Source: Octopus sinensis
Lineage: Eukaryota
Assembly: GCF_006345805.1 (NCBI RefSeq)
Contig: NC_043009.1
Coordinates: 11,904,001-11,968,000, forward strand
Direction: 5' to 3'
Length of the DNA: 64,000 nt
Of the stretch, positions 26,830-27,994 are shown in pieces (positions within the stretch are counted from its first letter, which is position 1; each line of letters begins with the position of its first letter). Both the position numbers and the translations under genes were made by a program. Under the pieces are notes generated by a model. It was not told the origin of the DNA. It worked only from the letters and a program-made list of their open reading frames with translations, and did not search any database.

Positions 26830-26890
26830 CTGCACTCATTCGGTTTCTTGCAAGATCCGTATGAATTATGGCATTGCTCTGGACAAATCG
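26830..26890 (-). CDS. Delta: Delta-like ligand EGF1 (DOS) exon, copy A (identical duplicate)
   Basis: Same 61 nt and same splice sites as 27934-27994, offset 1104 bp. Only one copy can be used in a full-length reading frame. Confidence 0.85.
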
Positions 26891-27024
26891 CTGGAATAGC
26901 AAACAGATGAAGAACTTAGATCCACATTTCTTGTAAACAAGATTTAATATTTGTTTATTTTAAAACACTAGACTAGACTAGACACACACAAACACACATA
27001 CATACACACACATACATATATATG

Positions 27025-27056
<32 letters not shown>

Positions 27057-27411
27057 TTATATATATATATATATGCATATATATACATATACATATGCAC
27101 ACACACACCACACATATATATATATATACTGTGTGTGTGTGTATATATGTGTGTGTGTGCATGTATGTATGTATGTGTATATATTTTTTTCAAAATGTGA
27201 CCTCGTGTGTACCGTTGGCGATTTTTTTTCCTCTGTCTTCCCTTCTCTGGATCTTTCCTTCTCCTATGTTTCCGACGAAGAGCTCCGCTCGAAACGTTAA
27301 ACCCTCCTTCTTTCCTGAGCGTCCAATAATACTATATTTGTTCCACGTCCTCGCGTTGTTGTGTTTTTTTGTGTTTTCTTGTTTGGATTAACTATTTATA
27401 TATATATATAG

Positions 27412-27450
<39 letters not shown>

Positions 27451-27933
27451 ATATATATATATGCGTATATATATATATATATAGATATATATATATATGT
27501 ATATATATATATATTATATATATATATATATATCTTGATTTTATGTTCAGTTATAATAAAAACAATTTTACATTAATCTGATAGGTTCCACTATACTTTT
27601 ATAGAGCAAAAATTTATCATTCTTATACAACAGACTGCCCGAGGTTGGCTTAGCAGACTGGAACTCCGAAGTCAATGTCAACAATATCCTTGTAGAAGAA
27701 AAATGAAGATACGAAGTATGTATTGTGTGTGCGTGTGTGGCAGTAGTTTGGGGTAGGTTATATATTTCTGTGATAGTTTTGTGATAGTGGCTCAATGGAG
27801 CCTGTATTTTTGAAATGCGAGACACACGAAACTCAAATGACAAAGTTAATATTAAAACTGAAAATAAAGATGAGACTAATATTGACGATAAGGTGGCATG
27901 CACAGCGATGTTGAGGAGAAATTCAATCCTTAC

Positions 27934-27994
27934 CTGCACTCATTCGGTTTCTTGCAAGATCCGTATGAATTATGGCATTGCTCTGGACAAATCG
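27934..27994 (-). CDS. Delta: Delta-like ligand EGF1 (DOS) exon, copy B (AICPEQCHNSYGSCKKPNECS)
   Basis: GCTATTCCAG|CGATTTGT...GAGTGCAG|GTAAGG; 61 nt, phase 1 to 2. This is exactly the exon needed between the DSL exon and 25404. Identical to copy A. Confidence 0.85.

What the first reader, a model, noticed from the sequence alone, without database searches (positions are those of the whole stretch)
26830..27994. Identical tandem duplicate of a frame-shifting EGF1 exon: nascent mutually exclusive exon pair or built-in poison switch
Seen: two identical 61-nt phase 1-to-2 exons with identical splice sites, 1043 nt apart. Using one copy gives full-length ligand. Using both gives ...NEC-SDLSRAMP-stop inside the second copy, a C2-DSL-only truncation and likely NMD target. 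Skipping both also frameshifts. The spacing is too large for steric exclusion. Established: tandem exon duplication is the usual origin of mutually exclusive exons, and EGF1-2 (DOS) contributes to Notch binding. Inference: a very young duplication that either lowers Delta dosage, produces a soluble DSL fragment, or awaits divergence. A false duplication in the assembly is a serious alternative.
Basis: partly seen in the sequence, partly recalled or inferred. Interest (0 to 1): 0.75.

Follow-up and report, generated by a model that had tools for sequence, protein, structure and literature searches.

The report
Perfect 1.1-kb exon duplication, unproven
A 1.1-kb piece of an octopus Delta-like (Notch-ligand) gene, carrying one small exon, appears twice in a row with no base substitutions, and it is most likely an assembly error or a very young structural variant that would break the gene, not an evolved splicing switch.

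Summary
The same 61-nt exon lies on the minus strand at 26830-26890 and 27934-27994, inside a ~1.1-kb tandem duplication (26027-27129 / 27130-28241). One copy keeps the reading frame. Two copies give ...NEC-SDLSRAMP-stop. No copy shifts the frame.

The gene is a Delta-like ligand (DSL domain, best solved match DLL1). Its product is identical to an Octopus vulgaris protein except for one residue.

In 752 nt of non-microsatellite sequence the two copies have 0 substitutions and 2 single-base indels. All other differences sit in TA/CA microsatellites. The breakpoints lie in the (CA)n(TA)n heads of two same-orientation SINE-like repeats, and the middle junction is a chimera of the outer two. This fits both real unequal recombination or slippage and a mis-join by the assembler.

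Argonauta hians has one copy of the exon in its genome. The O. vulgaris and O. bimaculoides protein models use it once. I found nothing that could enforce mutual exclusion. The duplicated exon has the strongest splice sites in the gene, so both copies should be spliced in, which would give a null allele.

My estimates: assembly artefact ~0.5, real young (probably heterozygous) variant ~0.38, evolved switch ~0.05. Reads are needed to decide.

The parts
27934..27994 (-). Upstream (first transcribed) copy of the 61-nt exon. It encodes A-ICPEQCHNSYGSCKKPNEC, the first four cysteines of EGF1, and enters in phase 1 and leaves in phase 2.
   Evidence: Exact match; splice sites; aligns to DLL1 ICLPGCDEQHGFCDKPGEC in 4xbm.
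26830..26890 (-). Downstream copy of the same exon, identical in sequence and in splice sites.
   Evidence: If spliced after the upstream copy it reads SDLSRAMP then stop.
26027..27129 (.). Duplication unit, copy A (1103 nt). Contents in + coordinates: TG/TA microsatellite, SINE-like body 26086-26289, (TA)n tract 26290-26430, unique 26431-26974 including the exon, then a CA/TA microsatellite.
27130..28241 (.). Duplication unit, copy B (about 1107-1112 nt), same layout: SINE-like body 27189-27392, (TA)n tract 27393-27535, unique part including the exon.
   Evidence: Against copy A there are 0 substitutions and 2 one-base deletions (at A positions 26429 and 26740) in 752 non-microsatellite positions.
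25961..26085 (.). Left boundary microsatellite M0: ...(CA)6(TA)6(TG)6(TA)3(TG)6... It is the head of SINE-like element A and forms a hairpin-prone quasi-palindrome.
   Evidence: Run-length structure; ssDNA fold -25.8 kcal/mol, z = -3.1; the same kind of CA head precedes three copies of the element.
27040..27188 (.). Junction microsatellite M1. Its left part matches M2 (...tgca(TA)4catatacatatg(CA)n) and its right part matches M0 ((TG)6(TA)3(TG)6catg...). The crossover lies in the shared (CA)n(TA)n. It carries two one-base phase breaks that neither M0 nor M2 has.
   Evidence: ssDNA fold -29.3 kcal/mol, z = -3.2.
28165..28252 (.). Right boundary microsatellite M2, (CA)9(TA)4, the head of SINE-like element B.
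28253..28442 (+). SINE-like element B, an old copy about 75% identical to element A. It marks the end of the duplicated block.
29722..29976 (-). DSL-domain exon (255 nt), immediately upstream of the duplicated exon in the transcript.
   Evidence: Pfam DSL, E = 7.8e-18; splice sites.
25274..25404 (-). Next exon (131 nt): the rest of EGF1 (SCRIGWEGEFC) plus EGF2.
   Evidence: (EGF_DL_JAG, JAG1-like_EGF2).
31934..31994 (-). Exon encoding the end of the MNNL/C2 domain (QSFTLSVEAWHDNLRNDTFR). It is also 61 nt long.
18861..23972 (-). Remaining EGF exons: 23806-23972, 21102-21315 and the terminal exon 18861-19489, which ends in ...FAKLIYFLPILTLNIRLMVCNI then stop.
   Evidence: The Argonauta and O. 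bimaculoides proteins share the same C-terminus.

Best explanation
The second exon copy is most likely not in the animal's genome. It is probably an over-expansion (false tandem duplication) made when a noisy long-read assembly was built across hairpin-forming (CA)n(TA)n(TG)n and long (TA)n microsatellites.

The true locus would read M0 - [SINE-like element A - (TA)n - unique 545 bp with the exon] - M2 - SINE-like element B. That gives one 61-nt exon flanked by introns of 1727 and 1425 nt, the same exon arrangement as in Argonauta.

Shown: the structure, the identity of the copies, the error-like nature of their differences, and the single-copy state in a relative.

Inferred: that the assembler, not the cell, made the join.

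Whichever made it, the duplication shows no sign of having been shaped by selection as a splicing device.
For: 1. The duplication breaks a conserved gene. The window's product matches O. vulgaris CAI9731602.1 over residues 119-503 except for D228E. The Argonauta ortholog has the same exon structure with a single 61-nt exon. The O. vulgaris, O. bimaculoides and Argonauta protein models use the exon once.
2. With identical and strong splice signals (acceptor 16/20 pyrimidines, donor 8/9 consensus match, the best in the gene), both copies should be spliced in. That gives a stop codon. This is what happens with the tandem exon 2 duplication of DMD (PMC9678653).
3. The copies have 0 substitutions in 752 non-microsatellite positions. 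Their only differences there are two single-base homopolymer indels. The microsatellites differ by one-base phase shifts and TA-to-GA changes. This is the error profile of long-read consensus, not of mutation, where substitutions normally outnumber indels (established knowledge).
4. The junction M1 has two one-base phase breaks that neither parent microsatellite has. M0 and M1 fold as strong hairpins. Such sequence is hard to sequence and align.
5. False duplications are common in assemblies of heterozygous genomes and cause false exon and gene gains (PMC9516828). O. vulgaris heterozygosity is 1.22% and its repeat content 68.7% (PMC10700109).
Against: - There is no gap (N) between the copies or anywhere in the window. 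Ko et al. found that false duplicates are most often separated by a gap.
- The unit is only 1.1 kb, shorter than typical long reads, so most reads should span it and show the true copy number.
- If the two copies were the two haplotypes (the commonest kind of false duplication), about 9 SNPs would be expected at 1.22% heterozygosity. Under a simple coalescent, P(0 differences) = 1/(1 + 0.0122 x 752), about 0.1 (inference).
- The junction lies in about 20 bp of shared (CA)n(TA)n at the heads of two same-orientation repeats. That is a textbook signature of real unequal recombination or replication slippage.
- No reads, depth data or second assembly of a close relative could be reached.
Confidence: 0.5

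Rival explanations
1. The duplication is real but very young: a structural variant, probably heterozygous or private to the sequenced animal. It arose by unequal recombination or replication slippage between the (CA)n(TA)n heads of SINE-like elements A and B. The spliceosome includes both identical exons. The mRNA then carries a stop codon 26 nt into the second copy and is degraded, or it yields a 251-residue MNNL-DSL-partial-EGF1 fragment. This makes it a loss-of-function or hypomorphic allele. The minority of transcripts that skip one copy are wild type.
For: - The layout is M0-U-M1-U-M2, with a chimeric junction in shared microsatellite at the heads of two direct repeats.
- The breakpoint sequence forms hairpins.
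- There is no gap, and the unit is shorter than long reads.
- Zero substitutions fits an age under about 0.4-2 My.
- Identical copies cannot be polished with short reads because the reads map to both. That would leave the residual indels seen here (inference).
- Ko et al. report a true allele-specific tandem duplication inside a contig.
- DMD exon 2 duplication is a precedent for the splicing outcome.
- The gene is an atypical Delta-like paralog without an intracellular domain, so a heterozygous null may be tolerated.
Against: - It disrupts a gene conserved from Argonauta to Octopus, so selection would keep such an allele rare.
- No read or transcript evidence exists for it.
- The one-base phase breaks at the junction and the error-like differences between copies show that the consensus is unreliable exactly here.
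Confidence: 0.38
2. The duplication is real and maintained. It would work either as a nascent mutually exclusive exon pair, where nonsense-mediated decay removes double and zero inclusion, or as a built-in poison switch that tunes ligand dosage or makes a soluble DSL fragment.
For: - The exons have the same length and phase, and 61 is not a multiple of 3, so only single inclusion is productive.
- Tandem duplication of an exon together with intron sequence is the proposed origin of mutually exclusive exons and of competing RNA structures (PMC6071210).
- Each exon copy is bracketed by mutually complementary TA/CA/UG tracts that could loop it out.
- A (UG)8 tract in the unique upstream intron (28759-28775) can pair with a CA-rich site 196 nt downstream of each copy.
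Against: - The copies are identical, so there is no isoform diversity.
- Steric exclusion and U2/U12 incompatibility are ruled out (1043-nt intron, identical GT-AG sites).
- The best non-microsatellite or UG/CA pairing is 17 bp including G-U pairs, and 5 of 100 shuffles reach it.
- TA tracts are self-complementary and would fold locally.
- Strong sites on both copies predict double inclusion.
- The arrangement is absent from the Argonauta genome, and the copies show no divergence.
- Known poison exons are conserved and regulated (established knowledge).
Confidence: 0.05

Closest known systems
False (heterotype or homotype) duplications in genome assemblies (Ko et al. 2022, PMC9516828)
   Same: Adjacent near-identical copies on one scaffold that add false exons to a real gene. 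They are associated with heterozygosity, sequencing error and repeats. The differences between copies look like errors.
   Different: There is no gap between the copies, the unit is only 1.1 kb, and there are no haplotype-type SNPs. Read depth and k-mer spectra, which define the class, could not be examined.
Pathogenic tandem single-exon duplications, such as DMD exon 2 duplication (PMC9678653, PMC5363679)
   Same: An out-of-frame exon is duplicated in tandem with its flanking intron. Both copies are spliced in and shift the frame. Skipping one copy restores the wild-type mRNA.
   Different: Those cases are documented in patients' DNA and RNA. Here neither reads nor transcripts are available. 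The unit is also far smaller, and its boundaries are microsatellites.
Mutually exclusive exon clusters born by tandem exon duplication, and the docking/selector model (Ivanov and Pervouchine 2018, PMC6071210)
   Same: Tandem copies of equal length and phase, intron sequence duplicated along with the exon, and a length that is not a multiple of 3.
   Different: The copies are identical. No significant competing structure was found. No exclusivity mechanism applies. The arrangement is not conserved (one copy in Argonauta).
Poison exons and alternative splicing coupled to nonsense-mediated decay
   Same: Including the extra exon introduces a premature stop codon upstream of several exon junctions.
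   Different: Known poison exons are distinct, usually conserved and weakly spliced regulated cassettes. This is a second copy of a strong constitutive exon with no divergence.
Repeat-mediated (Alu-Alu-type) non-allelic recombination causing intragenic duplications (from memory, not tested against a database)
   Same: Two same-orientation dispersed repeats flank the exon, and the junction is a chimera of their homologous parts.
   Different: The homology used is about 20 bp of (CA)n(TA)n microsatellite at the element heads, not the element bodies, which are only 75% identical.

Membership tests
DSL-family Notch ligand (Delta-like) | DSL domain | tested here: met
   Pfam PF01414, E = 7.8e-18. 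The best solved structure is Delta-like protein 1, 4xbm, E = 2.9e-81.
DSL-family Notch ligand (Delta-like) | N-terminal MNNL/C2 domain | tested here: inconclusive
   The window holds only the last exon of the domain (QSFTLSVEAWHD...). The near-identical O. vulgaris protein carries PF07657. The first exon lies outside the window.
DSL-family Notch ligand (Delta-like) | Atypical EGF1-EGF2 pair followed by EGF repeats | tested here: met
   PF21700 EGF_DL_JAG and PF21795 JAG1-like_EGF2, plus 7 EGF stretches.
DSL-family Notch ligand (Delta-like) | Transmembrane helix followed by an intracellular domain | tested here: not met
   The ORF ends in ...FAKLIYFLPILTLNIRLMVCNI* with nothing after the hydrophobic tail. 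The Argonauta and O. bimaculoides proteins end the same way. No transmembrane exon was found downstream.
Mutually exclusive exon pair | Adjacent homologous exons of the same length and phase | tested here: met
   Two 61-nt exons entering in phase 1 and leaving in phase 2.
Mutually exclusive exon pair | A mechanism that enforces exclusivity (steric hindrance, U2/U12 incompatibility or competing RNA structures) | tested here: not met
   The intron is 1043 nt. Both copies have identical GT-AG sites. The best docking/selector pairing is not above shuffles. Only removal of out-of-frame products by nonsense-mediated decay remains possible.
Mutually exclusive exon pair | The alternatives differ in sequence and so encode different isoforms | tested here: not met
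   The copies are 100% identical.
Mutually exclusive exon pair | Transcripts contain exactly one of the exons | not testable with these tools
   No RNA data could be reached. The protein models of three species use the exon once, but these are predictions.
Poison exon / splicing coupled to nonsense-mediated decay | Inclusion creates a premature stop upstream of exon junctions | tested here: met
   The stop lies 26 nt into the second copy, and four coding exon junctions follow it.
Poison exon / splicing coupled to nonsense-mediated decay | The cassette is conserved across species | tested here: not met
   Argonauta has one copy. Zero substitutions sets an upper age of about 0.4-2 My.
False duplication in an assembly (criteria of PMC9516828) | Adjacent near-identical copies | tested here: met
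False duplication in an assembly (criteria of PMC9516828) | An assembly gap between the copies | tested here: not met
   There are no N bases in the window.
False duplication in an assembly (criteria of PMC9516828) | Haploid or lower read depth, discordant reads, single-copy k-mers | not testable with these tools
   No reads are available.
Repeat-mediated tandem duplication (real structural variant) | Direct repeats at both ends of the unit and a chimeric junction | tested here: met
   M0 and M2 are the (CA)n(TA)n heads of same-orientation elements A and B. M1 joins the left part of M2 to the right part of M0.
Repeat-mediated tandem duplication (real structural variant) | Two-copy molecules present in the organism's DNA | not testable with these tools
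   No reads are available. DNA from O. vulgaris and O. bimaculoides was not retrievable.

The most novel reading that the evidence does not exclude
The duplication is real and fixed (or common) in this octopus lineage. It would then be a mutually exclusive exon pair caught at birth, before any divergence. Nonsense-mediated decay of double inclusion, and perhaps looping by the flanking TA/CA/UG microsatellites, would leave single-inclusion mRNA as the only productive product and lower the dosage of a tail-anchored Delta-like ligand.
Probability: 0.05. Interest if true: 0.6.

Novelty: not a real feature. Interest (0 to 1): 0.2.

Why it matters
If it is an artefact, it is a clean, gap-free example of how a 1.1-kb over-expansion at microsatellites can invent a "poison" exon in a conserved signalling gene. 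That is worth flagging to whoever annotates or curates this assembly.

If it is real, it is an ordinary kind of event: a repeat-mediated intragenic duplication giving a null or hypomorphic allele of a Delta-like paralog. It would interest mainly those studying structural variation in cephalopods.

Only the unlikely fixed-and-functional case would bear on the open question of how mutually exclusive exons arise.

The side observation may be of more biological interest than the duplication. This conserved octopod Delta-like ligand has no intracellular domain.

Tried and rejected
Searches and look-ups that led nowhere:
- A search with the 204-aa spliced DSL-EGF fragment found nothing. The same database did hold the O. 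vulgaris protein when I queried with the full-length sequence. The first failure was therefore a limit of the word index, not an absence.
- An exact search for the 61-nt exon in JGI metagenome contigs gave 0 hits.
- The O. vulgaris (P0006) and O. bimaculoides (P0152) genes are not on record.
- Four guessed products are not in the collection: the long isoform with E, the long isoform with D, the short isoform with E, and the 251-aa double-inclusion product.
- The first RNAduplex run timed out. I replaced it with a longest-complementary-run test against shuffles.
- Rfam and tRNA scans of the window found nothing, so the SINE-like element is not recognisably tRNA-derived.
- Regex and tblastn searches for the first MNNL exon and for a transmembrane exon found none. 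The orthologs later explained why.

Arguments I considered and rejected:
- A Poisson argument (P about 1e-4) that zero SNPs excludes a two-haplotype false duplication. Allowing for the variance of coalescence times gives about 0.1, so that model is disfavoured but not excluded.
- NAHR between the bodies of elements A and B. The middle element is identical to A throughout, so the crossover lies in the microsatellite head.

Full report
**Observation.** Both copies have the same acceptor (...tgtttgctattccag|) and the same donor (CAG|gtaagg). The exons are part of a tandem duplication of about 1.1 kb: 25961-27123 aligns to 27058-28241. It is the only near-identical repeat in the 64-kb window; all other repeat pairs are 82-93% identical. 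The window contains no N.

**The gene.** The gene runs on the minus strand. I placed seven exons with canonical GT-AG sites:

| Exon (window coordinates) | Length | Content |
|---|---|---|
| 31994-31934 | 61 nt | end of the MNNL/C2 domain |
| 29976-29722 | 255 nt | DSL domain |
| 27994-27934 / 26890-26830 | 61 nt | duplicated exon, first part of EGF1 |
| 25404-25274 | 131 nt | rest of EGF1 plus EGF2 |
| 23972-23806 | 167 nt | EGF repeats |
| 21315-21102 | 214 nt | EGF repeats |
| 19489-18861 | 629 nt | terminal exon |

- Pfam finds DSL (E = 7.8e-18), EGF_DL_JAG, JAG1-like_EGF2 and seven EGF stretches.
- The best solved structure is human Delta-like 1 (4xbm, E = 2.9e-81). There the duplicated exon aligns to ICLPGCDEQHGFCDKPGEC, the first four cysteines of EGF1.
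- A library-wide HMMER search found a 517-aa protein 99% identical to the window's product. It is CAI9731602.1, "neurogenic locus protein delta-like [Octopus vulgaris]".
- Over residues 119-503 that protein differs from the window's product only at D228E, inside the duplicated exon. Both window copies encode E.
- The window therefore comes from an octopus very close to O. vulgaris, but not from that reference sequence.

**Splicing arithmetic.**
- One copy gives ...CDQAICPEQCHNSYGSCKKPNECSCRIGWEGEFC... in frame.
- Both copies give ...NECSDLSRAMP then stop. The stop lies 26 nt into the second copy, and four coding exon junctions follow it.
- Neither copy gives a frameshift.

**Anatomy of the duplication.**
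- A global alignment shows 0 substitutions and 2 single-base deletions (TTT/TT at 26429, GG/G at 26740) in 752 non-microsatellite positions.
- Every other difference lies in microsatellites.
- Run-length coding shows that the long (TA)n tracts differ by changes in unit count, by one-base phase shifts and by two TA-to-GA changes.
- The layout is M0-U-M1-U-M2.
- M0 reads ...(CA)6(TA)6(TG)6(TA)3(TG)6.... M2 reads ...(CA)9(TA)4....
- The junction M1 has the left part of M2 and the right part of M0. The crossover lies in the shared (CA)n(TA)n. M1 also has two one-base phase breaks that neither parent has.
- M0 and M2 are the heads of two same-orientation copies of a SINE-like element about 200 bp long, with a (CA)n head and a (TA)n tail. 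Element A is at 26086-26289 and element B at 28253-28442. They are 75% identical. A third copy lies at 39125-39364.
- M0 and M1 fold as strong ssDNA hairpins (-25.8 and -29.3 kcal/mol, z about -3). M2 does not.

**Comparison with relatives.**
- The Argonauta hians ortholog (GAB1601697.1) could be fetched with its DNA (L001). It has the same exon structure. Exactly one 61-nt exon (L001 52609-52669) lies between the DSL exon and the EGF1b exon, and no second copy is found even at relaxed thresholds.
- The O. vulgaris and O. bimaculoides protein models also contain the exon once. These are predictions and say nothing about genomic copy number.
- DNA of the close relatives could not be reached.

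**Would the duplicated exon behave as a switch?**
- The duplicated exon has the strongest splice signals of the gene: 16/20 pyrimidines before the acceptor and 8/9 match to the donor consensus.
- At least 247 nt upstream and 800 nt downstream are identical between the copies. Both should therefore be recognised equally.
- The 1043-nt spacing rules out steric exclusion. Identical GT-AG sites rule out spliceosome incompatibility.
- I tested the Ivanov-Pervouchine model, in which a duplication that copies one arm of an intronic stem creates competing selectors (PMC6071210). The longest complementary run between the unique intron flanks and the non-microsatellite part of the unit is 17 bp of UG/CA repeat including G-U pairs. 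Five of 100 shuffles reach it, and the other comparisons are at or below the shuffle mean.
- The many TA/CA/TG tracts are mutually complementary. They are also self-complementary and would fold locally.
- The default prediction is therefore double inclusion and a premature stop. This is what happens with the tandem exon 2 duplication of DMD, where skipping one copy restores the wild-type mRNA (PMC9678653).

**Real or artefact?** The sequence alone cannot decide.

For an artefact:
- It breaks a gene conserved from Argonauta to Octopus.
- The copies differ only in ways typical of noisy long-read consensus: homopolymer indels and one-base phase breaks in dinucleotide repeats. Real divergence would show substitutions outnumbering indels.
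- The junction itself carries such anomalies.
- The boundaries are hairpin-forming microsatellites.
- False duplications that add exons to genes are well documented (PMC9516828), and octopus genomes are heterozygous (1.22%) and repeat-rich (68.7%) (PMC10700109).

For a real variant:
- There is no gap, whereas false duplicates are most often separated by one.
- The unit is shorter than long reads.
- The junction is a clean chimera in about 20 bp of microhomology between two direct repeats, the classic footprint of unequal recombination or slippage.
- A two-haplotype origin is moderately disfavoured. With theta = 1.22% and 752 sites, P(no difference) is about 1/(1 + 9.2), or roughly 0.1. This is my inference. 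The Poisson figure printed is too strict.
- Identical copies cannot be polished with short reads, which would explain the residual indels under either model.

Because a frameshifting duplication in a conserved gene is selected against while an artefact is not, I put:

| Explanation | Estimate |
|---|---|
| Assembly artefact | about 0.5 |
| Real young, probably heterozygous, loss-of-function or hypomorphic variant | about 0.38 |
| Maintained mutually exclusive or poison device | about 0.05 |

If the duplication is real, zero substitutions in 2 x 752 nt bounds its age at roughly 0.4-2 My, for neutral rates of 5e-9 to 1e-9 per site per year (the rates are assumed).

Half depth does indicate an artefact. 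One-copy spanning reads alone do not, because a heterozygous duplication gives about 50% one-copy reads and 0.75x depth. Ko et al. describe such a true allele-specific tandem duplication.

**Verdict.** The functional interpretation is not supported. This is most likely not a biological feature, and at best it is a new instance of a known kind of event (a repeat-mediated intragenic tandem duplication). Interest is low unless reads show that it is real and common.

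Noticed in passing
window 18861-19489 (minus); L001 62024-62602: This Delta-like protein has no transmembrane-plus-intracellular region. It ends about 60 residues after the last EGF in a short hydrophobic tail (...FAKLIYFLPILTLNIRLMVCNI*). Argonauta (...LTKLLYLLPILTLNVCLTVCNI) and O. 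bimaculoides share the same ending. It may be a GPI-anchored or tail-anchored ligand that cannot be endocytosed through an intracellular domain.
   Followed up: partly
window ~17360-17405 (minus): An alternative terminal exon encodes ...VIIQMCIICSSYLEL*. The O. vulgaris model CAI9731602.1 uses it from a donor inside the last EGF exon (CTTG|gtataa, ~19220). This would give a shorter isoform without the tail.
   Followed up: partly
window 18964-19028: An 18-nt coding tandem repeat (3.6 copies, 91% matches) gives RGEQSF-RGEQSF-RGEKSF in the juxta-tail region. O. bimaculoides has fewer copies and Argonauta has none recognisable.
   Followed up: partly
window 31934-31994 (minus): The exon encoding the end of the MNNL/C2 domain is also exactly 61 nt. 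The first coding exon (signal peptide plus MNNL) is not in the window. In Argonauta it lies 48.7 kb upstream of this exon.
   Followed up: partly
window 26086-26289, 27189-27392, 28253-28442, 39125-39364: A SINE-like element about 200 bp long with a (CA)n head and a (TA)n tail. Old copies are 75-88% identical. It has no tRNA or Rfam match.
   Followed up: partly
window 36451-36849 (+), 482-1052 (inverted copy, 92.5%), 31117-31281: Remnants of a mariner/Tc1-like transposase (...HPPHSPDIFPSDFHLF...FWEEGIFKLKGRW...). I recognised them by eye and did not run them against Pfam.
   Followed up: no
window 19643-20050, 33137-33590, 39565-40036, 47903-48305, 54324-54813, 61748-62176: At least six copies of another dispersed repeat of about 400 bp (82-93% identical), on both strands within the introns and flanks of the gene.
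   Followed up: no
window 28585-28700 (minus), 15600-15671 (+), 57977-58090 (+): Short ORF fragments carry a C-x2-C...G(L/F)xSHxR zinc-finger-like motif, probably retrotransposon relics. One sits in the intron just upstream of the duplicated block.
   Followed up: no
tool behaviour: the search for homologous proteins returned nothing for a 204-aa fragment that is 99% identical to a database protein. It found that protein when I queried with the full-length sequence. A negative result from that tool with an internal fragment is therefore not evidence of absence.
   Followed up: yes
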